Shown one piece after another: positions 7,685 through 48,222 of a stretch of DNA of 64,000 nt (its first letter is position 1; each line of letters opens with the position of its first letter). The notes under the pieces are model-generated. The model searched no databases. It was not told where the DNA came from and worked only from the letters and a program-made list of their open reading frames with translations. Origin of the DNA: Ginglymostoma cirratum. Lineage: Eukaryota. Both the position numbers and the translations under genes were made by a program. The stretch spans positions 62,001 through 126,000 of the forward strand of contig JAHRHZ010000266.1 of the NCBI GenBank assembly GCA_024137785.1. Reading direction: 5' to 3'.

Positions 7685-7728
7685 TCACTCCTTATGTTTG
7701 CTCACAACAGCTGCATAGGTTACATCTG
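7685..7728 (-). CDS. Terminal coding exon with canonical ITIM (VTYAAV) and stop
   Basis: Acceptor tttctatatctttctag (NAGNAG tagcag). Reads (A)DVTYAAVVSKHKE*, where VxYxxV fits the ITIM consensus. Conserved in the paralog at 61432-61475. Confidence 0.75.
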
Positions 7729-7856
7729 CTAGAAAGATATAGAAATCAGAGCTGATTGTAGTCATAATTTCAGTTTGAGAGTAATTACAGGAAAGGGGCA
7801 CCAAACATCAGTCCCTTTGGTGTCAGGGCAAATGACAGGGAAGGGAAATGTTTCAT

Positions 7857-8165
7857 CATAATGTCCCTACAGTGTGGAAACAGGCTCTTCACCCCAACAA
7901 GTCCACACTGACCACCCAGACCTATGCCCCTATAAGCCACCCATCCCTTAACACTATGGGCAATTTAGCATAGCAAATCCACCTCATCTGCACATCTTTG
8001 GACTGTGGGATGAAACTCGAGCACCCAGAAGAAACCCACATAGACACAGGGACAGGGACAATGTGCAAACTCCACACAGACAGTTGCCCAAAGGCTGGAA
8101 TTGAACCCGGAACCCTGGCACTGTGAGGCAGTAGGGCAAACCACTGAGCCACCATGCTGCCCCTA
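7857..8165 (-). mobile_element. tRNA-derived SINE, HE1-like
   Basis: The minus strand begins ggggcagcatggtggctcagtgg...gggttcaattccagcc (A/B boxes) and has a LINE-like 3' tail. Absent from the paralog at about 61605. Confidence 0.85.
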
Positions 8166-8635
8166 AGTCCAACAGTCATTCTCATTCTCTTCTGACTGTG
8201 ATACATAGAAAGAGAGAGACAATCTGCTTGACTGATAGTCAAGTATCATCCAATGGAATAGTGAAGAATCTGCTTGTTTTCTGATTAGTGCAGTAAGGTA
8301 ACACCCCAATGGAGATGGACAGTTTGACTGACCAATGAAAGCAGCATTGCAGTGAGGGGATGGAGCTTGAAGGTGATGTGATCAAATCTCCATGCTCCAC
8401 CCAGCCCCAAATGGCACTGTTCCACACATGGGAGAATGGGCTCCAGGGGCTGGGAAAGGAGAAAAGATTAGGATTTGGATTTTGAAAAGAAAAAAACTGA
8501 CTCACTCTCTTCTGAATCAGCAACTGAGACAGTCTTGCCATCTTGAACTGAAAGAGAATATTCTGTTGGTGAGGAGGATGTATTTTAAATGTTGAGAAAC
8601 ATCACTATGTGGAAAAAATATTTGTAGATGGTTAC

Positions 8636-8689
8636 CTTTTCTCTTGCTATCAAACGTGATGCTGGCGTAGGTACAGGAATCAGGCTGAG
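8636..8689 (-). CDS. Cytoplasmic exon with ITIM-like motif CTYASI
   Basis: 54-bp phase-1/1 exon, acceptor tttgtattacag, donor AAG|GTAACC. Reads (A)QPDSCTYASITFDSKRK. Splice sites are conserved in the paralog at 62087-62139. Confidence 0.7.
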
Positions 8690-8717
8690 CTGTAATACAA
8701 ACAGTATCCAAGCTGAA

Positions 8718-8933
8718 GAGATAGTAGGAACTGCAGATGCTGGAGAATCTGAGATAACAAGGTGTAGAGCTGGATGAACACAGCAGGCCAAGCAGCATCA
8801 GAGGAGCAGGAAGGCTGACATTTAGGGCCTAGACCCTTCTTCAGAAAAGGGTCTCGGCCCAAAACGTCAGCCTTCCTGCTCCTACGATGCTGCTTGGCCT
8901 GCTGTGTTCATCCAGCTCTACACCTTGTTATCT
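8718..8933. mobile_element. Short fold-back Penelope-terminus-derived insertion with 16-bp imperfect TSD
   Basis: Inverted arms of about 90 bp. Flanks cagtatccaagctgaa (8702-8717) and cagtatccacactgaa (8934-8949). Single empty site in the paralog at about 62152-62168. Confidence 0.8.
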
Positions 8934-9028
8934 CAGTATCCACACTGAAACTGCCTTACTTCAGCAGCTTTCTTACTTTAGAATCAAAGAATCTTACAGG
9001 AAAACAGAATCCTGTATTTCCATCATAG

Positions 9029-12000: not shown

Positions 12001-12372
12001 AATTTCTACCCCAGGATATTGGTACCCCTCTGGTTCAGGTGTAGACCATCCCATTTGTAGAGGTCCCACCTACCCCAGAATGACCCTCAAATATCCAGGT
12101 ATCTGAATCCCTCCCTCCTGCACCATCCCTGTAGCCACGTGTTCAACTGCTCTCTCTCCCTATTCCTCGCCTCGCCTCGCTAGCACGTGACACAGGTAAC
12201 AAACCAGAGATAACAACTCTGCTTGTTCTAGCTCTAAGCTTCCACCCTAGCTCCTTGAATTTCTGCCTTACATCCCCATCCCTTTTCCTACCTATATCGT
12301 TGGTCCCTACGTGGACGATGACTTAGGGCTGCTCCGCCTCCCCCTTAAGGATCCCAAAAACACTATCCGAGA
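9029..12372 (-). mobile_element. CR1/HER1-type LINE, near-complete ORF2 (APE endonuclease + RT) and end of ORF1
   Basis: ORFs 11398-11853, 11141-11401, 10036-11148 and 9102-9980 give EN and RT with frameshifts. TSD catcatag at 9021-9028 and 12373-12380. Empty site at about 62240. Confidence 0.95.
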
Positions 12373-13314
12373 CATCATAGCTTTACCTTTGAAAACTTTT
12401 TGATGAGCTGCATTAGAATCAGACATCAAACTGTTTTCAGAGTTATTTGGACAGGTGGTCCTCCAATAGGCCAACTTAAAAGGGGGAAAGAAAGTTGAGG
12501 AGTTCAGGTGGGATTCTCAAAGTCTTGGAGATTGAAAGTTAGGTACCAGAGACAATGTTATCACAGTCCAGTTAAACCAACACCAGTCATCTCTCTCTAA
12601 TGTGAGAACACTGTACCCTCCGGGATAAAGGTGAATTTATATTTACTGTAACGGATATGGAGTAGACAGAATTGGTGGTAAGAAGTTGTCTCAATGGATT
12701 GTAAGTGCATGAGGGTGGTGCAAAGATAGACTCAGTGCTGTAGAGGAATTTGAACCTGAGGAGGGATAACCTTTAATTTTATGCCTTTTTCAACTTGCAA
12801 GCAATTCTGGGCACCACGCCTTGGGAAGGATATTCTGACCTGAGGGAAAGTGTGGTGCAGAATGATGATATCTGGTCTCACACAGTTCAATTACAAGTTG
12901 TTCAATCACAAATTAGATTTGTATCCCTTTGCACTGCAAGGTTTGGGGAGTGATTTGATTTGATATCTCAAGGTAAGAAGAGCATAGACAATCTTTGTGC
13001 ATTTGCCAAGTTGGGATGACTCTGATGCCCTTTCGTGCGGATTCGTGATTCCATAACTACCAATGCTAATGCAGTGTTTCCAATTCTTTCACAGTCCTAT
13101 GGTTCAGGTCACAAAACCTGCACCCAGTACTCCATTGCAGAGGAAACACGTCCTGCTCATCCACAATTTTCATCCAGTTTGTCCAGAATTTTAAAGAGTC
13201 AAGGTTCACAGCGTCTCAGAGATATTGCAAACCGTGGTCTACACGAGGGAACTTATTGAGAGCTAAATTCAAAGTATGCCCTGTAATAAGGCGTGTCTTT
13301 CACATCCTGATTTA

Positions 13315-13920: not shown

Positions 13921-14064
13921 ACATATACTTGGAAATATATTCTCACTCCTTCACTGTCATCGGGTCAATATCTTGGAATTCCCTCCCTAAAGAGGTCAAC
14001 AATAGATTGGCAATGAATGATGGCCAGCCGGTGACACAAATGTCTCATGAATTAATAAAAACAA

Positions 14065-19535: not shown

Positions 19536-19701
19536 TATTGCTGTTCACAAATTGGTTGTTGCATTTTCCATTACAAGAATTAAAAGAATTGCATTTATAT
19601 TGCATCTTTCTTGACATCAGGGCACTGCATAACTCTTTACATTAGATGAAAGTAGGTGAAAATAGTTTGGTTAAATGAGTTAACAGGAGAGTTGGATTCA
19701 C

Positions 19702-19745
19702 CTGCATAGTTAATAAGAGTATAGACATTGAGCACAGCAGTAACA
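19702..19745 (-). CDS. Putative cytoplasmic exon 2 with Tyr motif NVYTLI
   Basis: Acceptor ctttttctgcgtactttag, donor CAG|GTGAAT, 44 bp, phase 2 to phase 1. This restores frame between 23953-23992 and 8636-8689. Reads (S)VTAVLNVYTLINYA. Confidence 0.5.
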
Positions 19746-21990: not shown

Positions 21991-22264
21991 ATAGTTTTAG
22001 AACAATGCAGACTCAATGAGCCAAAGGGCCTTATTCTGTGCTGTAGAATTCTATAACTCAGTGTAAAAGTCTGCCCCTGAATATCTATCCAGGAACCCCA
22101 CAGTCTTGATGCTTCACACTCTCTCTGTTACAGTGTGGAAAATGGACATTAATTGGTCAGTTAAAGTATAATCAGTACCTGGAGCAGGCGGCTGCTGGGC
22201 ATTATCAGTCCTGGGAATGCTGGACAAACCTGGTTCATTCCTGAAAAACACACAAAGGAACATT

Positions 22265-23952: not shown

Positions 23953-23992
23953 CTCTTCGAAAGTGAGGTCTTTTCGATTTGCTGAGAACCCC
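23953..23992 (-). CDS. Putative cytoplasmic exon 1
   Basis: Strong acceptor ctcttttttgtctctttag, 40 bp, phase 1 to phase 2, reading (G)GSQQIEKTSLSK. The donor GTAGTG is only moderate. Confidence 0.5.
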
Positions 23993-26355: not shown

Positions 26356-26466
26356 CTCCTTTCTTCCTGAAGATAATGAAGATGATGACAATGATGAAGA
26401 TGATGAGCAGGAGGGCAAGCAATGGGATGACCAGCAGATATACAGTGGGGAACTCAGTCCTCTTGG
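26356..26466 (-). CDS. Transmembrane exon of the Ig receptor (uncharged TM)
   Basis: 111-bp phase-1/1 exon, acceptor atttttacag, donor GTGGGT. Reads (A)KRTEFPTVYLLVIPLLALLLIIFIIVIIFIIFRKKG: a long hydrophobic run followed by the basic stop-transfer RKK, in frame with V2b. Confidence 0.85.
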
Positions 26467-26804: not shown

Positions 26805-27260
26805 ACAAAAACAGAAATTGCTGGAGAAACTCAATAGGTCTGACAGCATCTGTGGACAGAAAGCAGAGTTAAAGTTTTCAATCCAGTGACCCTTCTACAG
26901 CACTAATAGTCGCGAGGAAGAGGTGGTATATATGATCTTGACAGGGGTTGTGGGGGAAATGAGTGAGACGATAGGTGGAGATGGAGTCCAGAATGTGAGA
27001 AAGACAGTTAGGCAGACAAACAGATGGACAATGACACTCCAGAGAGAAAGACAACTTGATAAAGGAGACCATAACTCAGTGAAAGTAGACCGTGTCATGA
27101 CCGGACCTGGGGTGACAGTTGGACGCAAGGACATGGAAGGAAGCATTCAGACTCAAAAATTACTGAGGTCCATATTGAGGCCTGGAGGCCGCAGCATCCC
27201 CAAGCAGAAAATCAGATGCTGTTCTTCGAGCTTGCACTAAGCCTTGCTACAACACTGTGG
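26805..27260 (-). mobile_element. Penelope-like element 3' fragment, degenerate
   Basis: The reverse complement contains KLEEQHLIFCLG-type coding sequence and the terminal repeat. Confidence 0.7.
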
Positions 27261-28379
27261 CAAGTTTGAAACAGGGATGACTGGGAATATTTTTCCTGAA
27301 GCTCTTTTGGTGTATTAGTCAACATCTGATTATTAGTCCAGTTTAATTTCTTACCTTAAACTTTGTTGCAGCTTCAGTACAACTGAGTTGTTTGCTTGGC
27401 CATGACGGAATACAACAAATATTCCACCACCTTGCTGTGGGTCTGGAGCCACGTGTACGGAGGGCTAGGGACAGAAATCATGGACCAGGTGCTGTTCCTC
27501 ACCAAGGCTCAGACCAAACCCAAGAGCCAACTCCTGCTGCTTCAGACAGGACACAGTAAAACCCCATTTTTGAACACTGATGTACCACCCACTCCGGTCC
27601 TGCGCCTGACATGCTGGCCAGGCAAAGTGAAGACGGCAGATTTCATTCCTTAAAGGGCATGGTTGAATCAGATGGGATTTCCATCTCTCAACAATGGTCA
27701 CACGCATCCATTAATTTAGCTTTTCATTTAACCTCCAGATGTTTAAAAATGTACGCTCAAATTTGACCTTCTGCTGTTGTCAGATTTAAACTCATGGTCC
27801 CGGAGCTGGGTGCCTGGATTTTTGCAAAGTCACAGCAGCAGTGTACCGCCACCTCCCTTTGTAACCCATGTGTGAATGCAGGGGATGGGATAGGTTCCAT
27901 GTGGCTGTGATGTGTCACGCAGTCAGATGGACACTGGGGGAACACACTTGCACTGAAGGAACTATTCCTGATGAAGGAGTGAACACTTCCACTGGAACCA
28001 AAAGGGACATATTAGACTGTTGCACCTTCTTGCTCGCGGAGATGACCTTAGTGTCAGGATAACTTTGGGTTATTTGGAGATTGAGCTGAATGTTCTGAGT
28101 GTGTCAATGTCTTTCAGTACTGACATTGGAATGCACCTAAAGGGATCACCACATCCAATTACATTAAATATTTAAAAAGTCAAAGATCAAGCACATAAAC
28201 AAAATACTGCAGTTCCTGAAATAAAAATCAAAATGCTGCAAATGCTCAGCAGGGCTAATGTTTTAGTTCAATAACCTTTCACCATAAAATCAAATCATAA
28301 AAAATTCACAGAATCTGTTACACTCGCACTTTACACTCTCCACAGAGTGAAGACTTTATAATTCTCATTCAGTTACAGG

Positions 28380-28700
28380 ATGAGGATGTCACTGGCGAGG
28401 TCAACATTTATTGCCCACTCCTAAGAGGTAAGAATCAACCACATTGCTGTGGGTCTGGAGTCACATGCAGGCCAGTCCAGGTAACTACAACAGCTTCCTT
28501 CCCGAAAGGACGTTACTGAACCAGATAGGTTTTTACAACAATCAAGAGTGCTCACACAGTCATCTTTGGACTCTTACTTTGAGAATTTTATTGATATCAA
28601 ATTCCACCATCAAGCATGGTAGGATTTGACTCTCGTTCCCAGAACATTATCTAGGTATCTGGATTAACAGTCCAGCGATAATGCCACCAGCCATTGCCCC
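28380..28700 (-). mobile_element. SacSINE1/DeuSINE-like SINE
   Basis: Contains the reverse complement of the catgtgactccagacccacagcaatgtggttgattctt central domain, also seen at about 34640, 53150 and 60365. Confidence 0.65.
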
Positions 28701-28722
28701 CCCGGCAAAAAAGATTTCTTAC

Positions 28723-29070
28723 CATATACCTGAAGCCGAGTCTCTTTCTGGATCAGATACTGAGCATTGGGTTCTGAGATGTATTCCACCTGACACAGGT
28801 AAGTGTGATTGTCCCTCACACTCAGCTGGTCAATCCTGGTCGAGGCATTTCCCTCCTCTGGGTTCCCGATGAGCTCGTACCGATTTCTACCGCTTACAGT
28901 TGTCCAATTTCCCTGTGATTGGACTGTAAATGTTACAATGTGTTGGTAGGGCTTCTTCCTCATCCAGGTAACAGTGGACAGGGTGTCGGAGTCTCTGGTC
29001 ATGAAGATACAGGGTAAAGTAACTGAATCTCCATCTATTCCACTCACCACTAAGACATTTCCCTGCGCAG
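28723..29070 (-). CDS. Ig V-set exon V2b (second V-type domain)
   Basis: Open 348-bp phase-1/1 exon, acceptor ctttccccag, donor GTAAGA. Encodes AQGNVLVVSGIDGDSVTLPC...VTW...DNHTYLCQVEY...TRLQVY. Paralog of 43039-43386. Confidence 0.9.
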
Positions 29071-31019
29071 CTGGGGAAAGGACGAAGATCAGAATGGATG
29101 AGGTCAGTATGCAGAAGTTGTCAATTCAATTTGTTACATTTCTTTCAACTTCACGATAAAATGAGTAATTAAATGCGTCACTTATATTTATCACAGTTCT
29201 GGACTAGCCTGTTGTAGTCTCCTAAAGTAATCACCCTGATGAATATTACTCCCTCTCCACCCCCTCATTTTGAGTTACAGGTGCTCATTCACAAGATAAT
29301 TATGGATCAGAAAATGTACTGAACCCACCTGAATTCATTTATCCTGAGCCCAACACCCTCCTTCTCAGCTTTGCTAAATGTGTTTGTTATTTGTTCCCCA
29401 GCCGTACACTTCACACTGTGCCCCTTCAATCTGTCCAGGAATATCATTCCTGATTGAATATACGCCTGTGCGAAGGAGAATATTCCTGATATTAACCTGA
29501 ACATAACCTTTCACTCATTCCAAACTGTGACCTGTGCCATGAATACAGTTTGATTGAGGTCAATTGAAGTCTATAAGAAGATTTCCTGCAGCACCAACCA
29601 TGTCTTTGAATGTTGGGTGGTGGGGGAGAGGAATTAGCCTCATGCTGTACCATCTTTAAAACTTAATCATCTTCTGAAAGAGGGAATCACTCCTCATCTC
29701 CATCCTATTTTGAAAGGAGTTCCAAATTCACCCACTTCCTCTCAGCATCTACACTGTCAAGACCACTCAGGATCTTACAAGTTTCAATAAAGTCACCTCT
29801 TAATCTTCAGCAACGAGTAACCCTTGTTTGACTCTTAACCAATCAGAGTAGGCAGCAGCCACACTCTGATATTCTCAGCCAATGGGAAACAGGGAAGTGG
29901 TTTTTCACATTTTCTCAACCAATGAGACCTGAAGTTCTACAATGTGCTCACACAATGATGGATTAGAAGGTCCTTGCCCAATCTTGTCCTCAACCTCTGC
30001 CAATCACTGGACTGACATCAAGAAGGAGGTCATTTTCCCCATTGGGTCCTGGCTAGCTCCATGTGGAACAATCCAGGCAAGACCCACTCAATAGCTCGAT
30101 TCCCCCCCAACCCCTACCAATTTATTTCTTTCAAGTGTTTGTCTGTTTTTCGTTTGAAATCAATGACTATTCCCATATGCACCTCTGTTGATGTTGGTGA
30201 CTGTCAGCCATCAGCACTCTATGTGTAAAAAATTCACATTGCCTCTTCATCTCTGGCGCAAAATGTAAGGTCTGCATCCTTGTCCCAACAGCTAATGGAT
30301 GGACCTTTTGCTTGTCCTACTTTCTCTTCACCTGTCCCTATCTTCTTCACCTCAATCTAATCTCCCCTCAATCTCCATAGCTCCAAGGAGAACGACCTTT
30401 GCTTCTCAAACCTTGTAACTAAAATCAGTCTCCAATCTCCAACCCAAAAAATTTCAAGACCTCCCTGGAATACTTCAGGTAAATCTGCACTCTCTCACGG
30501 ACTTTCACATTCTTCCCAATGTGTGGTGACTGATCTGGATGCACAGTCGGAGCATTACCAATGTTTACGATTGTTAGGCTCCTTGACTGAAAGGTCAATA
30601 ATGATGGGGCATAATTTAATGTGAAAGCTTGGGAGACTGGAAGGGATTTGAGGAAACTTTTTTTTCAACAAGCAGGGAGTGGGAATTTGAAATGCACTGC
30701 TGGGAGGGTAATAGAGGCAAAAGCACTGAAATATTTTAAAACTACTTGGATGAGCAGCTGACCCATCATAAGATTCAAGGCTATGGGCCAAATGCTGGAA
30801 AGTGGGAGTAGTACAGATTTAGCCCAATTGGTTTGTTGGTGTAGATTCAATGGGCTCAAGGGCATCTTCTGTCCTGTTTGATTCTCTGATGCTGTGGTTC
30901 AGCATACCACGTGGGTGAATGGAAGGAACTAAAAGGGGAAGAAGATGATGGTGGGGGTAATCCTTTGGGTCCATTAAAGTAGCTATATGTTGGGACAGAA
31001 GGGTTCAGAAAAGACAGAC

Positions 31020-33210
31020 AAGGGGGTTACCAGGGTTGGAGGGTTTGAATATAGAGAGAGGCCGAATAGTCTGGGGTATTTTCCCTGGACCATGGAGATT
31101 GACAGGTGACCTTATAGAAGTTTATAAAATCATGACGGGCATGGATAGGATGAATAGGCAAGGCCTTTTGCCCAGGGTAGGGGAGTCAAAATGACAGGAC
31201 ATCGGTTTAAGGTGAGAGGGGAAAGATTTAAAAGGGACCATTTTCACGCAGAGGGTGCGACGTGTGTGGAATGAACTAGCAGATGACAAGGTGGAGGCTG
31301 GCACAATTACAATATTTAAAAGGCATCTTGATGCCTGCATGAATGGGAGGGTTTAGGGTGATATGTTCCAATTGCTGGCAAATGGGATTAGATTAATTTA
31401 GGAGATCTGGTCGGCATGGATGAGTTGGGCTGAAGAGTGTGTTTCCATGCTATACTTATCTATAGCTCTAATAGCTATCAGAAGACAAAAACTGAGAGGG
31501 AAACTGGCTGACTTACAGACCAATTAGTCCCCTGGACGTCTCTGGATGCTTCGAGGATATTAAAGGAAGTAGCTACAGAGACAATAACTGCACATGTACT
31601 AATCTTCCAAGAATCTTTAGATTCTGGATAGGTCCCAGATAATTAAAAATCTCCCAATATAACACCTTTGTCTTTCAAGGAAAGGAGACAAAAAAAGGTA
31701 ACCATAGGCAGTTCAGTTAACAATTGTTATTGGGAAAATGTTAAAGTATAATTAAACATGTAATCATTGTGCATTTGTAAATGTATAATATAATCAAAAA
31801 GAGTCAACATGGCTTCATGAAGGGGAAATCATGCCTGACAAATTTACTTGAATTATTTGAAGTGGTAACATGCTGGATTAATAAAGGGGAATCAGTGGAT
31901 GTTGTATATTTTGATTTTCAAAAGACATTTCACAAGGTGCTACAAATTAAGTTCCTTATTAAGATTAGGTTCCCTAGTGCTGGTGGCAGTATAATCAGCA
32001 TGGATGGAGGATTGACTAACTCATAGAAAGCAGAAAGTTGGGATAACGGCATTGATTTCAGGCTGGTAACCTGTAATTAGTGGAGTGCCACAGGGATCTG
32101 TTTTGGGGTCACATTTATTTACAATTTATGTTAATTTCTTGGATGAGATACTTGAACGTGTTGTAGCTCAGTTTGCTGATGATAGGTGAAAAGGCAATTG
32201 ATGAGGAAGAAACAAAGAAGCTCCAGAGAGATAAAGAGATGTTAAATCAGTGGGCAAAAACTTGGCAGTTGGAATAAAATGTGAAAAATGTTGGGTGATA
32301 CATTTTGGTCGGAAGAATAGAGGAGCTGAATATTATTGAAACAGAGAAAACCTGTAGAATGTTATAGAACAGAGGGATTTGGAAGGTTCATGAATCATAA
32401 AAACATTCAAGCTCAGCAGGTAGTAGGGAAGGCAAATGAAAAGTTGACCTTTATTTCAAAGAGAACGGAATATAAAGCTGGGGAGGTTTTGCCAGGTACT
32501 AGTCAGTTCACAGCTGGAATACTGTAAATAGTTTTGGTCTCTTATCAAAGGAAAGTTAAACTGACATTGGAAGCAGTCCAGAGAAGGTTCAAATAGTTGA
32601 TGCGAGGTATGGAGGGTCTGTCTTATGGGCAGCTGTTGAGTAGATTGGGCCAGTACTTGTTGGAATATAGAAGAATGAAAGGTGACCTTATTGAAACACA
32701 GAAGATTCTTCGGGTGCTTTACAGGAGAGAAGCAGAATGTGTGTTTCTCCTTGTGGGTGAGTGTAGAACCAAACGGCATCATCTCAGAAAAAGGGGTTAC
32801 ACATTTAAGATGAGAGGAATGTCTTCTCTTCAATGTGTTTGAATCCAGATAACAAGGTGTAGAGCTGGATGAACACAGCAGGTCAGGCAGCATCAGAGCT
32901 TTCCTGCTCCTCTGGTGCTGCCTAGCCTGCTGTGTTCTTCCACCTCTACACCTTGTTATCTCAGATTCCAGCATCAGCAGTTCCCATTATCTCTTTTTGA
33001 ATCCAGACTTCATTTCTGCAGAGACCAGTTAAGGTTGGGTCACTAAGCATAGTCAAGCTGAGATTAACAAATTTGTAATCAGCAAGGTGATCAAGGGCTG
33101 TAAAGTAAAAGCAGGAAAATGGAATTGAAGTTATATCTCAGTCATGATGTCATTGAAATGTGGAATGGACACAAGGGGCGAAATGCCTTATTCTATTCCT
33201 ATGTCTTATG
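31020..33210 (+). mobile_element. Cluster of degenerate CR1 LINE fragments
   Basis: SQHGFMKGKSCLTNLLELFE...DVVYFDFQK peptide and CR1 3' ends at about 31470 and 33210. Confidence 0.85.
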
Positions 33211-33779
33211 GTCTACCTGCCTCAATTCTCCATATCTCTCATTTCCTTTTCCAACCACTCTCTCAATATGTCCTGACATCTTCAAAAATGATGGACACAA
33301 ATGGCCAACTTCCTTTATCCAGACCAATCCTTTAAGACCATGACATTGACTCCATATGGCCCATAGGGAGATGGAAATAGTGGGGATCGTGGAGCATGGA
33401 TCCTTTGTGATGTTTTCTCTGTCGCTGTCCCAGAACACTGCAGCCAGTTTGAATGTGACAAATTACTGTGTCAGTGAAGAAAACAGGAGGTTTCAGAGAG
33501 TGTGAGATAACAAGGTGTAGAGCTGGATGAACACAGCAGGCCAAGCAGCATTAGCGGAGCAGGAAAGCTGACGTTTTGGTCTGGACCCTTCTTTCAGAGA
33601 GTGCGATGGAATGGTCTTTAAATCCCAGCATCATCTCTCTCTCTCCTTCTCACTGTCTCCTGCCTGAGACCCAGTGAAAAAGCTCAAGAGAAAGAGCCAA
33701 CCCGAGAGCTCCCTGACCAGGGGAACCTGTTCCCATTGAGCTATCAGGGCAGTGACACCATCCGGACGTTGTTCCTTAC

Positions 33780-34163
33780 CTTGTACTTCCAGCATTGTTG
33801 GAGACCATGTTCGAAAACTGTCAATATTGAGTTCCACACGACAAAGGTAGGAACCAGCATCCTCCCAGCTCAGTCTGTCCATCATTAGTGAGACATCTTT
33901 GTTGCTGAGGTTCCCCACGAATCTGAATCGATTCTCACCATCCTGCTGTTTCACATTCTCACACAGCTCACCCTGGGAATGGTCTAGACCAGGAAATGCA
34001 CATCTAAAGATTACTCCTGTGTCAGATTTAATCCATATCACGGAGCCAGTGAGTGTGAGATTAGTGTCTGGGTGGGTGAAGCTGCAGGGTAAGACAGCGG
34101 TTCTTCCTTCCTCTGCCCTCACACCATCCGCGACTGTCATTGACCAATCATTTTCAGAAAACT
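33780..34163 (-). CDS. Ig V-set exon V1b, Siglec-15-like sialic-acid-binding-type domain
   Basis: Open 384-bp phase-1/1 exon, acceptor ccccttgcag, donor GTAAGG. Encodes FSENDWSMTVADGVRAEEGRTAVLPCSFTHP...IFRC...ELC...RFRFVGNLSNKDVSL...DAGSYLCRVEL...LEVQ. Same length as, and paralogous to, 47839-48222. Confidence 0.9.
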
Positions 34164-34289
34164 CTGCAAGGGGAAAGCAAAAAAGAGAGGATATGAACAC
34201 AGCACAGGAACAGACATCAGTGTTTGGAACAGAAACTTTGAGACTCAATCCTGAGTTTGATATTTAGTGAGAATAGGGTTAGAAATTAT

Positions 34290-41310: not shown

Positions 41311-42407
41311 TCTCGATAAATTTATAACTAGTTCTAGCTGGGAAAATTTCAGTATAAATGCTGAAGATCGGGTGGAGGGAGGGGACAGGAGTGCATGCTC
41401 AGTAGAGATGGAAACCAGAGAGAGAGAAAAATAATTGTACAGACAAAGGAATGGAAAAAGGTCAGCCTGGGAGAATGAATAGCTGCAGAAGGGGGCCATT
41501 AGTCACCGACAATGGATTGTTTGTAGTCACAGCCCATGTGATGACAGGGCCTGGTGTGTTGGGTTTGGGAGAACGAGAAAGGGGAAGGAGCTCAAGCCTT
41601 AAAATTATTGAACACAATATTGAGTCCAGAAGGCCACAGGATCCCCACACAGCGGTGTGTTGAAATGGCAGGCAACTGGAAGCACAGGGTCATTTTTGTG
41701 GATAGAATATATGTATTCTGCAAAGCAGTCTGTGTTTTATCTTCCCAATATAGAAGTAGAAGTGAATTGCACAGAGTTAGAGAGTTTTTTGGTGGAACAT
41801 CTCTGAGCCAGTTGTGATGGAGAGAGAGAGCTCAAGATATTGCCATGCATCGCCGTATGCACAGAGAGTGGAAGGCAGATTTCATTTCCTCACCATATTC
41901 TTACCAGACCATGGGGCTGATTTCTCATTAGGGGCTGACGACTGGTGGCCATTTAACCTGAAGGCCACTACATCTCAGGCGAAGGAAGAGGTTGAGAAGA
42001 ACAGTTCTTCATTGTAACAGCCTGTGTGGGAATTGAACGGTTGGCATCACAACACTTTGGAAACCAGTCGTCCAGCCAACTGAGCTAAACCAACCCCCAG
42101 ATCCCCTAAATGGCTTGACTGAATCAGATGGGCTTTTCCAGTTATAATCTATGGTCACATGTGGCCATTAGATTAATTTCTCATTTAAATTCCAGACATT
42201 TAAAAATTACATTCAAGTTTCACCTTCTGCTCTTGCAAGGTTTCAACCCATGGCCCAGTGACAGCAGCAGTATACCGCCACCACCCTTTATAACCCATGT
42301 GTGGCTGCGTCTTTAGGAAAGGTCCTAGATGGGCGTGAAACCTCTCCCAGATGGACGTGAAACCTCTCCCAGATGGACACTAGAGGAATGTACTTACACT
42401 GAACTAT

Positions 42408-42640
42408 CTCATAGAATCCCTACAGTGTGGAAACAGGCCCTTCGGCCCAACAAGTCCATACCAACCCTAAAAGCATCCTACCCAGACCCATCCCCCCATC
42501 ACCCAAATAATCCACACCATCCTGAACACTGTTGACAATTTGGCCTATACACCTAGCCTGCACGTCTTTTGGACTGTGGGTTGAAACCGGAGCACCTGGA
42601 GGAAACCCACGCAGACACTGGGAGAACGTGCAAACTATGC
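42408..42640 (-). mobile_element. HE1-like SINE, 5'-truncated
   Basis: Homologous to 7857-8070. Absent from the paralogous intron at about 27955. Confidence 0.8.
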
Positions 42641-43038
42641 CTGATGAAGGTATGAGCATTTTCATTGTAAACAAAAGGGACACATTAGATTGTTGCACCT
42701 TGCTGCTCGAGGAGATGATCTCAACGTCAGTATAACTTTGGGTTGTTTGGAGATTGAACTGAATATTCTGAGTGCGTCAATGTCTTTCAACACTGACATC
42801 AGAATGCACGTAAAAGGATCAGCACATCAAATTACAGTAAATATATTACAAACTCAGAAAGCTGGAAATTTGAAATAAAAATCAAAATACTGCCAATACT
42901 CAGCAGGCAACCATCACCTGTGGAAAGAAACAGGGTTAACATTTTAGTTCAATGACCTTTCACCAGAAAATCAAATCACAAAACATCCACAGGATATGTC
43001 ACACACTCAGATTGAAGAATGAGTGAATGGCTGCTTAC

Positions 43039-43386
43039 CATGTACCTGCAGCCGAGTTTCTTTCTGGATCAGATACTGGTAACTGAGTCTTGATCTGTAT
43101 TCCACCTGACACAGGTAAGTGTGATTGTCCCTCACACTCAGCTGGTTTATCCTGGTCGAGGCGTTTCCCTCCTCTGGGTTCCCGATGAGCTCGTACCGAT
43201 TTCCACCGTTTACAGCTGTCCAATTTCCCTGTGACTGGGCTGTAAATGTAATGATGTGTTGGTAGGGCTCCTTCCTCAACCAGGTAACAGCGGCAAGTTT
43301 GGAGTAGTACCTAATCCTGAAGGTACAGGGTAAAGTGACTGAATCTCCCTCTGTCCCACTCACCACTGAAACTTCTCCCTGAGCAG
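43039..43386 (-). CDS. Ig V-set exon V2a (second V-type domain)
   Basis: Open 348-bp phase-1/1 exon, acceptor ttcctcag, donor GTAAGC. Encodes AQGEVSVVSGTEGDSVTLPC...VTW...RYELIGNPEEGNASTRINQLSVRDNHTYLCQVEY...TRLQVH, with canonical B-strand Cys, C-strand Trp and DxxxYxC. Confidence 0.9.
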
Positions 43387-43924
43387 CTGAGGAAAGGGCA
43401 AACATCAGAATGGATGAGGTCAGTGGGCAGAAATTTTGGATTCAATTTGCTGCATTCTTTTCAACTTCATAATAAAATGAACAGTTAACAACTTTCCTCA
43501 TTTCTTTCATGGGTCTGTCCAAGACCTTCCCCTACAAAAGTCACCCTGATCAAAATGTCTCTCCACCTCTCGATTTGAGAACCTTGAACACAAGGTATTT
43601 ACAGATCAGGAAGTCCATTGAATACTTTGGAATTCATTCATGCAGAACCCTCCATCAATTCCTCAAAGTTAATATTGTTTAAAAAAAGTCAAAAATTACA
43701 CAGGTTTCCTCCATCACTCTGCCCAACAATCACATTCCAAGTATTGGCCCCACTCTGAGTGAAGGAGTACTCCCTGGCATCATTCCTAATGTGACTCCAA
43801 GTTCAAGTGAAGGCAAGCGCCCGGCCGAGGGCTGTAAAGAACCTGATTGGCAGTCGGGGTGAAGATTTGCATTGGCGCAGTCACCACTACCAAACAGTGG
43901 TTTGTGGAGGGAGTGGAATCTGTA

Positions 43925-46560
43925 CTGAAAAACAAAAAAAGCTGGAGCTTGCAGCAGGTCAGGCAGCATCCATGGACAGAGAGCAAACGACAGTTTCGAG
44001 TCTAGGTGACTCTTCATCAGAGCTGATAATGAAGTGTGGAGGGGCAAGCACTTATGCAATTTTGTGGGGGTGGGGTGCTGGGGGAGAGACGCTGCTGATA
44101 GTGCTGATTGTGTGATCGGAATGTGAGAATGGCAGAATAATGGTGTATCTAACAGCCAAACAGTACAGATGGTCCCACTGGCGTGGGGAGAGGGGAAATG
44201 GTAACAGAAAATGCAACAAGTAAACTGACAGGAAGGGAATAAATGGGAAGGAGTTCACAATCTGAAGGTGTTGAACGGAATATTAAGACCAGAAGTTTGG
44301 AAAGTGCTCAGTCTGAAGATGAGTTTTGTTCCTCCAATTTGGTCTGTGAATCACTGGGACATTGCAGTGAGCCGAGGACAGAAAAGTGGGCATACGAGCA
44401 AGATGCTGTGTTAAAATGACCAATTACAGGATGATTGGGGTCATGCTTGTGCACAGACCAGAGGTGTTCTGTAAAGCGGTCTCCAAGTCTGTGTTTGATT
44501 TCTCCAATGGAGATTAAGCCACGTAGGGTGCAATGAAAGCACTCAACTAGATTGGAGGAGGTACAGGTGAAATGCTGCCTCACCTTGAAAGACTGTTTAG
44601 GCCCTTGGATGGTGAGCAGCGAGGAGGCAAAGGGCCAGGTGTTGCACCTCCTGCAGTTACGGAAGGTGCTGTGGGAAGGGTTTGGTATTGTTGGCCAATG
44701 AGGATGGACCAGGGTGTCCTGGATGGAACAGGCCCTGTGAAATGGAGACAGAGGAGGCAGGGGAAGGTGTGTTTAGTGGTGGCGTTCTGCCACAGTTGTT
44801 TGAAATGGTGGAGGATGATCCTTTGAATGCGAAGCCATGTGGGATGAAAAGTAGTATACGGGGCACCTGATCACACTATTGTGAGTTATGGAAGGGCAGG
44901 GCAGAAGCACAGGTGACAGGTCAGATGTGGTTCAGGTCTCTGTCACCCACAATGGGTGGGAAACTATAGGTAAGGCAGAAGAAACCTATGTCAGAAGCAC
45001 TGTTTTTGAAGGTGGCATCATCTGATCAGATCCGATGGAGGCGAAGGAACTGGGAGATTGGAAGGGAATCCTTACAGGAAATTGGGTGCGAATAGCTACA
45101 GTGAAGATAGTTATGGGAGTGAGTGGCTTTGCAGTGGGTGGCGGTGGACAGTTAATCCTGCAAGATGGAGACAGAGAGGTCAGGGAGAGGAAGGAAAGTG
45201 TCAGAGATGCACCAGGTGAAAGATGTAGAGGGGTGGAGGTTGGAAACAAAATTAACAAACTTTTTAAAGTCCAGGCAAAAGTATGAAGCAGCACCAAAGC
45301 AGCTGTCACTGTACCAAAAAAAGTGTTATGGGAGGGGACCAGTGTAGGCCTGGAACGAGGATTGTTCCACATACTCCGTAGAAAGACAGGCATAACTGGC
45401 ACTCATATGATTGCCCATAGTCACTCCTTTGACTTGGCAGAAGTGAGATGAATTAAAGGAGAAATTGTTCATTGACAGAACAAGTTTAGCCAAGCAGAGG
45501 ACAGAAGTGCTGGATAGGATTGTTCAGAAGTGTGGTCGAGTAAGAAGCTGAGAGCTCTTAAACCATCCTTGTGGGGAACGGAGGAATAGGGGAATTGGAT
45601 ATCTATGGTGAAGAGGAGGCAGTTAGGGCCAGGCAACTGGAAATTGTCAATATGGCAGAGGGCATCAGAGGAATTGTGGATGAAGGTGGGCAGGTTGGGA
45701 CAAATGCAGGAAGGATGGAGTCAAGGTGGGAGGAAATGAGCTCAGTGGGTCAGGAACAAGTTGCTATGATGGGTGTACCAGGACAGTCCAGAGTGTGGAT
45801 TTTGTGAAGGAGCTAGAAGTGGGGTTGTCTGGGGTTGGGAGACTATTAGGTTAGACGCAGTGGCGGGGAAATCTCTGGTGGTAATGAAGTTGTTGGCAGT
45901 CTTGGCAACAATAGCTTGATGTTAGGATGTGGGGTATTGGTCCACGGGGTGGTAGGATGAAGCGTCCGAGAGTTGGCATTGAGCCTCAGCAAGTTAAAGA
46001 TCAGTGCGCCAAACAACAATGGTACCACCCTCGTTGGTGGGATTAATGACAAAGTTGGGGTTGGACCTGAGAGAGCAAAGTGCGGCAATTTCAGAAGGGG
46101 ACAGCTTAGAGTGGGCAAGAGGATCGGAGAAACTGAGACAACTGATATCATATTGGCAGTATGCAACGAAGAACTCGAGGGCAGGTAGGAGGCCAGAGGA
46201 AGGGGCCCAAGTGGAATGTGAATACTGTAGTGGTGTGAAGTGATCCAATGATTGGTAGGGGGGGGGGACGAATTACTGCCTGAAGGAGTTGGCACAGTGA
46301 TGGAGGTGGCGGACAAACAGGTCAACATCACAGTGATCCCAAAATTCATTCAGGTGGGTGCATATGGATGGGAAGCTGAGTCATTTGCTGAAGACAGTAC
46401 GTTCAGCCTCAGAGATGGGAAGGTCATGAGGGATGGTAAAAATATAGCAAGGGCTGGGGTTGAGGGGACGGACCTCTGGGGACAGAAAGAGATGGCATCC
46501 AAGGGCTAGGAAGAGGTTGGTGCTCAGGGAAGTTAAGGGATTGACTCAGAGGGACAAGAG
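43925..46560 (-). mobile_element. Penelope-like retroelement (degenerate RT + GIY-YIG endonuclease)
   Basis: Peptides LSPSEIAALCSLRSNPNFVINPTNEGGTIVVW (N-terminal of the PLE RT) and HFTCTSSNLV..C....IGEIKHRLGDRFTEH..HFN (GIY-YIG). Terminal repeat with a hammerhead-like core at about 43988-44024. Confidence 0.9.
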
Positions 46561-46589
46561 GGAACAGGGTACCCAGAAAGGAGAGGCAG

Positions 46590-46740
46590 TAGTAGTTTTT
46601 GGAGGTCAGTCATCTCAGCTCCAGGAAATCTCTGCAAGAGTCCCTCAGGGGACTGTCCCAGGCCCAACCATCTTCAACTGCTTCATCAATGACCTTCCCT
46701 CCATCGTAAGGTCAGAAGTGGGCATGGATGTTCGCTGATG
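46590..46740 (+). mobile_element. Non-LTR RT fragment (CR1/L2 clade)
   Basis: VPQGTVPGPTIFNCFINDLPSIV peptide. Confidence 0.75.
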
Positions 46741-47838
46741 AACATGGGCTGCAGGAGAACATCACCACCTACAGGCTCCCCTTCAAGACACTCACCATCC
46801 TGATTTGGAAATATTTCACCATTCCTTCAGTGTCAGTGGGACAGAGATCTGGAATTCCTTCGCCAGCTGCATCATGAGTGTCCCTGCACCTGAGGGAATG
46901 CAGCAGTTCAAGGGGGCAATTCACCATTCCCTTCTCCAGGGCTATTTGGAATTGTCAATAAAGGCTGACTGACTCTGTAAACATCTAAATTATAAATATA
47001 GTTCCAAGTCAGGATGGTATGTATTTGCTGCCAAGTGGGGAGTATTCCAAGCCTGTGACCTGCTCTTGTAGTGACAGTCTCATTTACACTCCTGGGCTCA
47101 CTCCTTGTCCACAACTGAGTGAGCCATTGAGGGGAGTTAAGAATGAATCACATGACTGTCGGTCAGGAGACACATGTCTATCAAGCCAGGTGAGGATGGC
47201 AAATTTCCCTCCTAAAGGACATGAATGTTTTTCAAAAGTGTTGGTTTACCGTCAAGAGCAGTATTCAGTTCTTGATATTTTCAAATTAAAATTTCAAAAT
47301 TAGCCATGGGTTGGAACCTATTCCCCAGGACATGAGCCTCTAGAGAAGGCAGCTCCCCTCGTTTTCTCCTCAGCCAATGGATACATCATATAGCAATAGT
47401 GAGAATCTCAGCCAATGCAAGCTTTCTTCACCCTGAGAAGTACTCATCCAATGATGACTCAGGAGGTACAAGGTCTCTCTTGTCCTCATCCAATGGTGAT
47501 AGAGCAGGGATTTCATTAGTGGGGATTTTGGAGCTTGGATCCTCAGTCATGTTTTCTCTGTTCTCTATCTCAGAATACTGAAGCCAGTTTGAACAAAATT
47601 AATGAGCGAGTGTGAGATACTGTGGGAGGTTTCAGAGATGGTGCTGGAATAGTCTATAAAGCCCAGCCTCCCCTCTTTCTCTCTCTCACTCTCTCGCACT
47701 TCCCTTCTCACTGCCTCCTGCGTCAAACCACCTGAAAGAGCACAGGACAAGTAGCCAACCGAAGAGCTCCCTGACCAGGTGGAGCCTGTCCCCATAGAGC
47801 TATCAGGGCAGCGACACCATCCAGATATTGTTCCTCAC

Positions 47839-48222
47839 CTTCCACTTCCAGCCTTGTTGGAGACCGTGTTTGAAAACTGCCAGAACTGAGTTCCACACGA
47901 CAGCGATAGAAACCAGCATCCTCCTGCTTCAGTCCCTCCATCATTATTGAGACATCTTTGTTGCTGAGGTTCCCCACGAATCTGAATTGATTCCCACCAT
48001 CCCGCTGTCTCATATTCTCGCACAGCTCACCCTGGGAATGGTCTGGACCAGGATGTGTACAGTCAAAGATAACACCTTTGTTCTGTTTCTTCCATATCAC
48101 GGAGCCGGTGACTGTGAGATCAGTGTCTGGGTGGGTGAAGCTGCAGGGTAAGACAGCAAAGCCTCCTTTCTCAGCCCTCACAGTGTTCGCAACTTTAATG
48201 GACCAACCGTTTGCAGAATACT
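47839..48222 (-). CDS. Ig V-set exon V1a, Siglec-15-like sialic-acid-binding-type domain
   Basis: Open 384-bp phase-1/phase-1 exon between acceptor ctcctcacag and donor GTGAGG. Encodes YSANGWSIKVANTVRAEKGGFAVLPCSFTHP...VIW...IFDC...ELC...FRFVGNLSNKDVSI...DAGFYRCRVEL...TRLEVE. The motif order (WSxxV, AVLPCxFTHP, FxC..ELC, FR.GN..D.SL, YxCRVE) matches Siglec-15 V-set as recalled; no search was run. Confidence 0.9.

What the first reader, a model, noticed from the sequence alone, without database searches (positions are those of the whole stretch)
7685..48222. Inhibitory-type Siglec-15-like receptor built only from V domains: a possibly undescribed cartilaginous-fish receptor family
Seen: intact, phase-compatible exons give V1-V2-TM-tail. 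V1 has the WSxxV/AVLPCxFTHP/FxC..ELC/YxCRVE pattern with four Cys and the F-strand Arg. The TM has no charged residue. The predicted tail (RKKGGGSQQIEKTSLSKSVTAVLNVYTLINYAAQPDSCTYASITFDSKRKADVTYAAVVSKHKE) has up to three YxxI/V motifs, including the ITIM VTYAAV. Known: mammalian Siglec-15 is a single V-C2 gene that binds sialic acid through Arg143 (YFCRVE) and signals through DAP12 via a TM lysine, without an ITIM. Inference: this is a tandemly expanded, SHP-recruiting sialic-acid receptor family that uses a Siglec-15-type binding domain with inverted signalling polarity, functionally like CD33-related Siglecs.
Basis: partly seen in the sequence, partly recalled or inferred. Interest (0 to 1): 0.9.

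Follow-up and report, generated by a model that had tools for sequence, protein, structure and literature searches.

The report
Shark inhibitory Siglec-15-like receptor gene
This is a real shark gene for a membrane receptor built only from Siglec-15-type V domains (four V exons, not two) with an inhibitory ITIM tail, one member of a large, unpublished shark and ray family of paired inhibitory and activating receptors that may do what CD33-related Siglecs do in mammals.

Summary
The exons are real, on the minus strand, with canonical splice sites and compatible phases. The interval holds four V exons, not two: Va1, Vb1, Va2 and Vb2, made by an internal duplication of a Va-intron-Vb block. They are followed by an uncharged TM exon and five tail exons.

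Both V types match human Siglec-15 best. Va keeps Siglec-15's four Cys, Trp44 and Arg143. Vb has Gln in place of the Arg.

Its 19.7-kb exon (NVYTLI) has no homolog support. Relatives support two other exons instead. That leaves CTYASI and the terminal ITIM VTYAAV.

Transcript-like contigs from two studies confirm the Va2-Vb2 splice. The Vb1-Va2 junction, which decides between one four-V gene and two genes, is unresolved. The leader exon probably lies in the gap at 57621-58020. All three gaps inside the finding are intronic.

The family has at least 86 protein clusters in about 20 shark and ray species, under inconsistent automatic names. It comes in ITIM forms and Siglec-15-like TM-lysine forms. 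Arg is kept in 24 of 25 ITIM-form Va domains and 12 of 22 lysine-form ones. I found no paper on it. ITIM-bearing Siglec-15-like genes also exist in teleosts and salamanders. The scan met this family before, in the adjacent window (s1-879531). Ligand and signalling remain untested.

The parts
47839..48222 (-). Va1 exon (384 nt, phase 1-1): Siglec-15-type V domain with W6, four Cys and the F-strand Arg (YRCRVE)
   Evidence: sequence, splice sites. Pfam V-set, 3.6e-11. PDB best hit Siglec-15 7zoz, 6.5e-11. AlphaFold model pLDDT 84.5, Foldseek top hit 7zoz with TM 0.78.
43039..43386 (-). Vb1 exon (348 nt, phase 1-1): second type of Siglec-15-like V domain, with Gln in place of the Arg (YLCQVEY), no A-strand Trp and only two Cys
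   Evidence: PDB best hit 7zoz, 3.6e-11; tblastn to domain 2 of relatives, 1e-32 to 1e-42.
33780..34163 (-). Va2 exon (384 nt, phase 1-1): paralog of Va1 (83% nt, 69% aa), Arg kept (YLCRVE)
   Evidence: contigs of runs X1 and X2 cover it and join 33780 to 29070.
28723..29070 (-). Vb2 exon (348 nt, phase 1-1): paralog of Vb1 (86% nt, 77% aa)
   Evidence: the joint 29070<->33780 is seen in two runs, and a 503-nt contig stops aligning exactly at the predicted donor 28723.
26356..26466 (-). Transmembrane exon (111 nt, phase 1-1): hydrophobic core without a charged residue, followed by RKKG
   Evidence: 77-82% identical to the TM of Hemiscyllium, Chiloscyllium and Heterodontus ITIM-type proteins.
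23953..23992 (-). Cytoplasmic exon 1 (40 nt, phase 1 to 2): GGSQQIEKTSLSK
   Evidence: weak match to the same position in relatives.
22179..22240 (-). Cytoplasmic exon 2 supported by homology (62 nt, phase 2 to 1): R-NEPGLSSIPRTDNAQQPPAP.
   Evidence: 90% identical over 21 aa to Stegostoma P0200, 81% to P0198.
19702..19745 (-). It has splice-like borders but no homolog support, so it is probably not part of the main transcript.
   Evidence: sequence; no relative matches it.
8636..8689 (-). Cytoplasmic exon 3 (54 nt, phase 1-1): AQPDSCTYASITFDSKRK, the conserved CTYA[SED]I motif
   Evidence: 74-89% identical to many relatives; the motif recurs across the family.
8506..8547 (-). Cytoplasmic exon 4 (42 nt, phase 1-1): V-QDGKTVSVADSEE.
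   Evidence: matches ...VADSEE(T/N) before the final ITIM in Hemiscyllium, Stegostoma and Heterodontus proteins.
7685..7728 (-). Last coding exon: (T)DVTYAAVVSKHKE plus the stop codon (TGA 7687-7685), holding the classical ITIM VTYAAV
   Evidence: a terminal V[TI]YA[AE]V is conserved in ITIM-type family members of sharks and rays.
26902..34196 (-). Proximal copy of the internal duplication block (Va2, intron, Vb2 and about 1.8 kb). It ends 436 nt before the TM exon.
   Evidence: colinear blastn chain with 41327-48261.
41327..48261 (-). Distal copy of the internal duplication block (Va1, intron, Vb1 and about 1.7 kb). Homology starts only about 35-40 nt upstream of the Va acceptor, so no leader exon was copied.
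57621..58020 (.). Assembly gap where the leader exon of this gene is expected. The letters are unknown and were not looked up.
   Evidence: 28-437 matches 57212-57620 and 2150-2515 matches 58139-58503; in the downstream unit the leader exon lies between those anchors, at 763..703.
703..763 (-). Leader exon (MGSLYACLSAVLLSVSVRGY, phase 1) of the next gene of the tandem array, whose V exons lie beyond the window start
61444..62143 (-). Tail exons of the neighbouring, decayed paralog: the last exon DVTYAAVVSTLKE*, the VQDGKTVSVADS exon, and a QPDSCT exon with a stop at the Tyr codon

Best explanation
The interval holds all visible coding exons of one member of a tandemly repeated elasmobranch gene family. 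The family descends from the Siglec-15 lineage and comes in inhibitory and activating forms. This member is of the inhibitory type.

Proposed structure: a leader (probably hidden in the gap at 57621-58020), then Va1-Vb1-Va2-Vb2 with no C2 domain, an uncharged transmembrane helix, and a cytoplasmic tail of about 75 residues with CTYASI and a C-terminal ITIM, VTYAAV.

Shown here: the exon structure, the Siglec-15-type V fold with the conserved Arg and Trp in Va, the conserved ITIM, the Va2-Vb2 splice in RNA-like contigs, and the existence of TM-lysine sister forms in other species.

Inferred: (a) all four V exons are spliced into one mRNA; (b) the Va domains bind sialylated ligands through the F-strand Arg while the Vb domains act as spacers or protein-binding modules; (c) the phosphorylated ITIM recruits SHP-1/2 and dampens leukocyte activation, as CD33-related Siglecs and PILR-alpha do.
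For: Exons, phases and splice sites.

Siglec-15 affinity of the V domains:
- Both V types hit Siglec-15 best among PDB sequences.
- The Va1 model hits 7zoz first, then sialoadhesin.
- In the alignment Va keeps W44, C64, C95, C104, C142 and R143 of human Siglec-15. These are the residues PMC10264397 names as the two disulfides, the salt bridge and a CH-pi contact.

Family:
- 86 clusters in about 20 species.
- ITIM forms and LCIPLGxK forms both occur.
- Arg is kept in 24/25 ITIM-form Va domains against 12/22 K-form ones.
- Va and Vb each form a strongly supported clade, in which ITIM and K forms interleave by species.

One gene with four V exons:
- The duplicated block excludes both the leader and the TM exon.
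- No leader, TM or tail exon was found between Vb1 and Va2.
- NCBI models with a-b-a-b plus TM plus ITIM exist in Hemiscyllium (P0185, 654 aa). a-b-a-b models also exist in Chiloscyllium punctatum and Stegostoma.

Expression: the Va2-Vb2 joint is seen in contigs from two studies, and a contig breaks exactly at the Vb2 donor.
Against: - The Vb1-Va2 junction was not observed. No contig crosses the Va2 acceptor.
- Two gaps of estimated size lie in that intron and could hide a TM/tail exon or a second leader.
- The leader and start codon of this gene are not visible.
- dN/dS between Va1 and Va2 is about 1.0-1.3. This fits diversification but also relaxed constraint on one copy.
- The polyA RNA run X5 gave almost no reads on the V exons.
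- Runs X1-X3 are only guessed to be RNA.
- Tyr87 of human Siglec-15, a sialic-acid contact, is not conserved.
- The cloned zebrafish Siglec-15 ortholog bound glycans poorly, as cited in PMC7226832.
- Ligand and signalling are wholly untested.
- The deeper placement of Va and Vb relative to chondrichthyan Siglec-15 domains 1 and 2 was supported only in the quick tree, not in the careful one.
Confidence: 0.68

Rival explanations
1. There are two genes rather than one. Va1-Vb1 would be a separate unit: a truncated, secreted or pseudogenic gene, or one whose TM/tail exons are hidden in the gaps. Va2-Vb2-TM-tail would be the functional two-V inhibitory receptor, with its own leader hidden in a gap.
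For: - Most family members are a-b two-domain proteins (69 of 94 architectures are 'ab').
- Two gaps lie between Vb1 and Va2.
- Only the Va2-Vb2 junction was seen in RNA-like contigs.
Against: - The duplication block begins about 35 nt upstream of the Va acceptor and ends before the TM exon. It therefore copied neither a leader nor a TM.
- No leader-like or TM-like exon was found in the readable 13 kb between the pairs.
- Four-V models exist in related species.
Confidence: 0.22
2. It is a real ITIM receptor of this family, but not a sialic-acid lectin. The Va face would bind a protein or other ligand, and the Arg would be kept for another reason.
For: - Tyr87 is not conserved and the G strand is three residues shorter than in human Siglec-15.
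- dN/dS is near 1 in Va.
- Zebrafish Siglec-15 bound glycans weakly (PMC7226832).
- NCBI's names for the family wander between pIgR-like, JAML-like and A33-like.
Against: - Arg is kept in 24/25 ITIM-form Va domains and Trp44 in most.
- The best fold matches are Siglec-15 and sialoadhesin.
- Loss of Arg mainly in the activating forms is the pattern known from paired Siglecs (background knowledge).
Confidence: 0.35
3. It is a decaying copy: an apparently intact reading frame in a birth-and-death cluster that no longer makes a functional protein.
For: - The neighbouring copy at 61.4-62.1 kb is decayed, with a stop at the Tyr codon.
- No leader is visible.
- Introns are filled with LINEs.
- Depth in the polyA run is low.
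Against: - Ten exons are open with canonical splice sites.
- Spliced Va2-Vb2 contigs occur in two studies.
- All motifs are conserved.
Confidence: 0.1

Closest known systems
Siglec-15 (human/mouse V-C2, TM Lys, DAP12; PDB 7zoz)
   Same: The V domain is the best sequence and fold match. W44, both disulfide pairs and R143 are conserved in Va. The activating sister forms of the shark family share the PLGxK transmembrane motif.
   Different: This gene has no C2 domain, an uncharged TM, an ITIM tail, two V types repeated twice, and sits in a multigene tandem array instead of being a single conserved gene.
Chondrichthyan Siglec-15 proper (Callorhinchus XP_042192165, Mobula XP_062903801: V-V-C2-TM Lys) and Heptranchias XP_067838218 (V-V-C2-TM-ITIM)
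   Same: They have two successive V domains of the same two types. The Heptranchias form ends in AIYAAVV, like this family.
   Different: They keep the C2 domain. The quick tree placed them as sisters of Va and Vb, but the careful tree left this unresolved.
CD33-related Siglecs, including the paired Siglec-5/14 and Siglec-11/16
   Same: They have an Arg-bearing V domain, a membrane-proximal YA[ST][LI]-type motif plus a distal motif, paired inhibitory and activating members with homogenised ectodomains, Arg loss in some members, and rapid tandem evolution.
   Different: CD33-related Siglecs have V plus C2 domains with a different Cys pattern. Fish are reported to lack them (PMC7226832). Here the scaffold is Siglec-15-like and V-only.
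PILR-alpha / PILR-beta
   Same: They are paired receptors with a Siglec-like V domain and no C2 domain, using an ITIM versus a TM Lys with DAP12, and show Arg-dependent sialoglycan recognition (background knowledge).
   Different: PILR has a single V domain. PILR was not among the top sequence or fold hits. I take the resemblance to be functional, not shared ancestry.
Teleost siglec15l (e.g. Conger XP_061119044) and salamander 'Siglec-12-like' V-V proteins (Pleurodeles XP_069061771, Ambystoma XP_069482836)
   Same: They combine a Siglec-15-like Arg-bearing V domain with an uncharged TM and ITIM tail. The salamander tails read CTYADI...VTYAVV, much like this gene.
   Different: siglec15l keeps a C2 domain. 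The salamander proteins have two Arg-bearing V domains of one type. The relationship to the shark family is unresolved.
Skate MDIRs (modular domain immune-type receptors)
   Same: They are an elasmobranch multigene family with a variable number of Ig domains and both ITIM and charged-TM members (background knowledge).
   Different: MDIR domains are described as I- or C2-set and CD300/pIgR/TREM-like. No hit among the 86 clusters carries that name or comes from Raja eglanteria. No MDIR sequence was available, so there was no direct test.

Membership tests
Siglec family (general) | N-terminal V-set Ig domain with the conserved sialic-acid-binding Arg on strand F | tested here: met
   Va1 YRCRVE and Va2 YLCRVE align with R143 of 7zoz. 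The model has the F strand at residues 103-111. Vb has Gln at that position.
Siglec family (general) | V domain followed by one or more C2-set domains | tested here: not met
   No C2-like exon was found in the window by motif scan, or by tblastn with the C2 regions of Siglec-15 proteins and siglec15l. Family proteins go from Vb straight to the TM.
Siglec family (general) | Sialic-acid-dependent ligand binding | not testable with these tools
   This needs Va-Fc binding with sialidase and Arg-to-Ala controls.
Siglec-15 (orthologue) | Siglec-15-specific Cys pattern (C64-C142 and C95-C104) and Trp44 | tested here: met
   The alignment checked against PMC10264397. It is met in Va only, not in Vb.
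Siglec-15 (orthologue) | Transmembrane Lys for DAP12/DAP10 pairing | tested here: not met
   The TM exon 26466..26356 has no charged residue in its core. No K-type TM exon was found in the window.
Siglec-15 (orthologue) | Single-copy conserved gene with V-C2 (or V-V-C2) architecture and no ITIM | tested here: not met
   The gene lies in a tandem array, is V-only, and has an ITIM tail.
ITIM-bearing inhibitory IgSF receptor | Cytoplasmic (I/V/L/S)xYxx(I/V/L) motif after an uncharged TM | tested here: met
   VTYAAV lies in the last exon. It is conserved as V[TI]YA[AE]V in ITIM-type relatives of sharks and rays.
ITIM-bearing inhibitory IgSF receptor | Phosphotyrosine-dependent recruitment of SHP-1/SHP-2 and inhibition of activation | not testable with these tools
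   This needs peptide pull-down or a chimeric receptor assay.
Paired inhibitory/activating receptor family | Closely related ectodomains joined either to an ITIM tail or to a charged TM with a short tail | tested here: met
   One search found about 25 K-TM clusters and about 30 ITIM clusters. One search placed Heterodontus ITIM and K forms as sisters (99/95), and found the Leucoraja ITIM and K Vb domains nearly identical. No K-form gene lies in this window.
Skate MDIR family | Sequence membership | not tested
   No MDIR sequence could be obtained. The only indirect point is that no hit was named MDIR or came from Raja eglanteria.

The most novel reading that the evidence does not exclude
Cartilaginous fishes built their own 'CD33-related-Siglec-like' system from the Siglec-15 lineage. 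It would be a fast-evolving, V-only family of paired receptors in which:
- the inhibitory members are held to sialic-acid ('self') recognition, with Arg kept in 24/25;
- the DAP12-type activating partners drift away from it, with Arg kept in 12/22;
- ectodomains are homogenised between the partners;
- valency is tuned by duplicating a Va-Vb exon cassette (two, four or a-b-b-b domains).

That would be an independent origin of inhibitory sialic-acid self-recognition in a lineage said to lack CD33-related Siglecs.
Probability: 0.35. Interest if true: 0.8.

Novelty: new variant of a known kind. Interest (0 to 1): 0.62.

Why it matters
The literature says fish have only the four conserved Siglecs and lack the inhibitory CD33-related ones (PMC7226832). 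How non-mammalian vertebrates sense sialic acid as 'self' through inhibitory receptors is therefore an open question.

This gene family gives a concrete and testable candidate in sharks and rays. It has a Siglec-15-type binding domain on an ITIM tail, with DAP12-type partners. It also shows Arg-loss and ectodomain-homogenisation patterns that parallel mammalian paired Siglecs.

It shows as well that chondrichthyan, lungfish and gar Siglec-15 carries two V domains. That bears on how the mammalian V-C2 form arose.

In practical terms, the family is annotated under about ten unrelated names and would benefit from a proper description.

Tried and rejected
1. Protein search with Va2 alone found only six short models and no transcript fragment spanning an exon junction.
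2. The window's own species is not among the protein hits. The best identity was 76-84%, to Chiloscyllium and Stegostoma, so no existing model of this very gene could be consulted.
No contig crossed the Va2 acceptor. The polyA run X5 had a depth of about 0-4 on the exons.
The Vb1-Va2 intron of the Hemiscyllium four-V gene could therefore not be inspected for hidden exons.
5. Domain-by-domain identity to four-V proteins of other species gave no clean d1/d3 orthology. I dropped the argument that the duplication predates speciation. Concerted evolution or repeated duplication are equally possible.
6. The quick tree made Va and Vb sisters of domains 1 and 2 of chondrichthyan Siglec-15. The careful tree left this open, so I do not claim it.
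7. Searches for a C2 exon, a Lys-bearing TM exon, or an ILYAEI/SFYVEI-type tail exon in the window found nothing.
8. The upstream in-frame stretch before Va2 looks signal-peptide-like in tblastn, but it is the translated polypyrimidine tract and has no ATG. I rejected it as a leader.
Comparison with them rests on PDB rankings only.
All searches were exon by exon, by reference.
11. The gaps were not filled or looked up.
Full report
**1. What is there**

The window is vertebrate DNA rich in LINE and SINE copies, with N runs at 16181-16190, 36233-36382, 38644-39043 and 57621-58020. All receptor exons are on the minus strand. Reading the DNA fixed the borders.

| Exon | Coordinates | Length and phase |
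|---|---|---|
| Va1 | 48222..47839 | 384 nt, phase 1-1 |
| Vb1 | 43386..43039 | 348 nt, phase 1-1 |
| Va2 | 34163..33780 | 384 nt, phase 1-1 |
| Vb2 | 29070..28723 | 348 nt, phase 1-1 |
| TM | 26466..26356 | 111 nt, phase 1-1 |
| cyt1 | 23992..23953 | 40 nt, phase 1 to 2 |
| cyt2 | 22240..22179 | 62 nt, phase 2 to 1 |
| cyt3 | 8689..8636 | 54 nt, phase 1-1 |
| cyt4 | 8547..8506 | 42 nt, phase 1-1 |
| last | 7728..7685 | stop TGA at 7687-7685 |

All exons have AG acceptors after pyrimidine tracts and GT donors. The lengths sum to a frame that closes exactly at the stop.

There are two V types (Va and Vb), each present twice. The same reader raised this four-V question separately (s1-879555).

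**2. The gaps**

No exon touches a gap and no reading frame crosses one.
- The gap at 16181-16190 sits inside a LINE reverse-transcriptase ORF, in the 13.5-kb intron between cyt2 and cyt3. Comparison with the sister LINE copy at 9.0-12.4 kb suggests about 0.5 kb of LINE is missing there.
- The gaps at 36233-36382 and 38644-39043 lie in the 8.9-kb intron between Vb1 and Va2, among repeat fragments.
- Their true sizes are unknown, so hidden exons cannot be excluded. I did not fill them or look them up.

**3. Internal duplication and the tandem array**

Self-comparison gives a colinear chain 26902-34196 <-> 41327-48261.
- The chain is a block of Va exon, intron, Vb exon and about 1.7 kb.
- Homology starts only about 35-40 nt upstream of the Va acceptor and ends 436 nt before the TM exon. 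The duplication therefore copied neither a leader nor a TM.
- Va1 and Va2 are 83% (nt) and 69% (aa) identical. Vb1 and Vb2 are 86% and 77% identical.
- dN/dS is about 1.0-1.3 for the Va pair and 0.55-0.7 for the Vb pair.

A second chain, 28-14447 <-> 57212-63310, shows the whole gene is one unit of a tandem array.
- A leader exon (MGSLYACLSAVLLSVSVRGY, 763..703) lies downstream of our stop codon. It belongs to the next gene.
- Tail exons of an upstream, decayed copy lie at 61.4-62.1 kb, with TAA at the Tyr codon of the CTY motif. This confirms note s1-879649.
- By colinearity our own leader should lie between 57620 and 58139, which is inside the 57621-58020 gap.

**4. The tail**

tblastn with relatives supports cyt2 (R-NEPGLSSIPRTDNAQQPPAP, 90% identical to Stegostoma P0200) and cyt4 (V-QDGKTVSVADSEE, followed by T-DVTYAAV exactly as in Hemiscyllium P0185). 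That exon has the same phases as cyt2 and is probably a chance AG...GT stretch.

The supported tail therefore has two Tyr motifs:
- CTYASI, a family-wide CTYA[SED]I motif;
- the terminal ITIM VTYAAV, seen family-wide as V[TI]YA[AE]V.

**5. Expression**

Only one read-laying run of at most 6 kb was allowed, and I used 28650-34250.
- Contigs of two runs from two studies (X1, depth 10.8; X2, depth 24.1) carry the joint 29070<->33780. It has CT..AC ends on the plus strand, which is GT..AG on the gene strand. This is exactly the predicted Va2-Vb2 splice.
- A 503-nt X1 contig stops aligning exactly at the predicted Vb2 donor (28723), with 363 nt lying elsewhere.
- No contig crosses the Va2 acceptor, so the Vb1-Va2 junction is unresolved.
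- The polyA raw-read run gave almost no reads on the exons.
- The contig runs are only guessed to be RNA, but an intron-less joint at canonical sites is hard to explain otherwise.

**6. What the domains are**

- Both V types are Pfam V-set.
- Among all PDB sequences the best hit of Va1 is human Siglec-15 (7zoz, E 6.5e-11). The next single-domain Siglec hits are sialoadhesin at 1.8e-5 and CD33 at 2.6e-5. Vb1 also hits 7zoz best, at 3.6e-11.
- In the alignment Va keeps W44, C64, C95, C104, C142 and R143. According to PMC10264397 these are the CH-pi Trp, the two disulfides and the salt-bridge Arg. Tyr87 is not kept, and the G strand is three residues shorter but retains an aromatic residue.
- Vb has Gln at the Arg position, no A-strand Trp and only the canonical Cys pair.
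- An AlphaFold model of Va1 (pLDDT 84.5, pTM 0.80) matches 7zoz first (TM 0.78), then sialoadhesin and Siglec-7.

**7. The family**

- An exhaustive profile-free search with Va1 found 310 proteins at E <= 0.001.
- A search with the full-length Mustelus relative found 86 clusters in about 20 shark and ray species.
- All are automatic NCBI models. Their names include 'uncharacterized', 'Siglec-15', 'Siglec-12', 'Siglec-10', 'pIgR-like', 'JAML-like', 'A33-like', 'sialoadhesin-like' and 'CD33-like'.

The family comes in two signalling types:
- an uncharged TM with an 85-127-residue ITIM tail;
- a TM reading LCIPLG[LV]K with a short tail. The PLGxK motif is that of bird and other Siglec-15 proteins.

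Architectures are mostly a-b. There are also a-only, a-b-a-b (Hemiscyllium twice, C. punctatum, Stegostoma, Narcine) and a-b-b-b (Heptranchias) forms.

The Arg after the F-strand Cys is present in 24 of 25 Va domains of ITIM forms, but in 12 of 22 of Lys forms. Vb never has it. These counts are of clusters, not of independent events.

In a careful ML tree:
- Va (99/99) and Vb (99/100) are each monophyletic;
- ITIM and Lys forms interleave by species. Heterodontus ITIM and K forms are sisters, and the Leucoraja ITIM and K Vb domains are nearly identical;
- the two copies within a four-V gene pair with each other in both this window and Hemiscyllium.

That pattern indicates gene conversion or repeated recent duplication.

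Deeper links are unresolved. The groups concerned are:
- chondrichthyan V-V-C2-TM(K) Siglec-15 of Callorhinchus and Mobula;
- the Heptranchias V-V-C2-ITIM protein;
- tetrapod and teleost Siglec-15;
- teleost siglec15l;
- salamander V-V-ITIM proteins.

A quick tree had suggested domain-by-domain sisterhood with chondrichthyan Siglec-15.

No C2 exon and no Lys-TM exon exist in this window.

**8. One gene or two**

For one gene:
- the extent of the duplicated block;
- the absence of leader, TM or tail exons in the readable sequence between the pairs;
- full phase compatibility;
- four-V models with TM and ITIM in related species.

Against one gene:
- the junction was not seen;
- two gaps lie in that intron;
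- Va dN/dS is about 1.

**9. Mechanism**

Shown:
- a type-I membrane protein gene with Siglec-15-type V domains;
- a conserved binding-site Arg and Trp in Va;
- an uncharged TM;
- a conserved ITIM;
- partner genes with a DAP12-type Lys elsewhere in the family.

Inferred:
- Va binds sialylated ligands;
- Vb is a spacer or second binding module;
- the phosphorylated ITIM recruits SHP-1/2.

The contrast in Arg retention between inhibitory and activating forms is what one expects if the inhibitory forms must keep recognising a host ligand. It is suggestive only.

**10. What is known**

- Siglec-15 in mammals and teleosts has R143 and a TM Lys and signals through DAP12/DAP10. Fish are stated to lack CD33-related Siglecs (PMC7226832).
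- Searches for Siglec-15 with shark, Siglec with cartilaginous fish or elephant shark, MDIR and siglec15l found no description of this family.
- siglec15l appears in the literature only as an annotated zebrafish gene.
- The library lacks most subscription journals, so a description elsewhere cannot be excluded.
- The scan itself met the family before, in the adjacent window (s1-879531), and reached the same reading.

**11. Verdict**

This is a real gene of a real, large, apparently unpublished family. The exon model needed correction, the family is a paired one, and similar polarity switches exist in bony vertebrates. I class it as a new variant of a known kind.

Every search was exon by exon, by reference.

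Noticed in passing
window 394-655 and 1423-1684: A 262-bp inverted repeat at 100% identity brackets the leader exon (763..703) of the next gene. It could be an assembly artefact or a very recent inversion or duplication.
   Followed up: no
window 61444-62143 (-): The neighbouring paralog's tail exons are decayed. The QPDSCT exon has TAA at the Tyr codon and a shifted frame after it, while the last exon (DVTYAAVVSTLKE*) is still open.
   Followed up: yes
window 22117-22178 (-), the intron just after cyt2: Read-through of the cyt2 donor gives APGTDYTLTDQLMSIFHTVTERV*. This is 59% identical to the C-terminus of a Hemiscyllium isoform (P0003/P0188) that ends there without an ITIM. It may be a conserved intron-retention isoform lacking the inhibitory motifs.
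   Followed up: partly
proteins P0025 (Callorhinchus), P0053 (Mobula), P0018 (lungfish), P0020 (gar): The Siglec-15 proper of chimaera, ray, lungfish and gar has two V domains before the C2 domain. The single-V form of teleosts and tetrapods may therefore be derived.
   Followed up: partly
proteins P0017 (Pleurodeles) and P0027 (Ambystoma): Salamander proteins named 'Siglec-12' by NCBI are V-V proteins with Siglec-15-like Arg-bearing domains. Their tail reads CTYADI...VTYAVV, very like the shark tail.
   Followed up: no
window 9025-12377 and 15501-18373 (-); 5029-7420 and 50532-52960 (+): There are two pairs of related LINE (reverse-transcriptase) copies at 83-89% identity. One ORF of 580 aa runs into the gap at 16181-16190. 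These copies account for the very long introns.
   Followed up: no
window 33512-33698, 32764-32950 and 31081-31267: Short intronic stretches have enormous depth in all four runs (up to about 2e5 in contig word depth, about 800 in raw reads) and many loose ends. They are highly expressed or abundant SINE-like repeats, not part of the gene.
   Followed up: no
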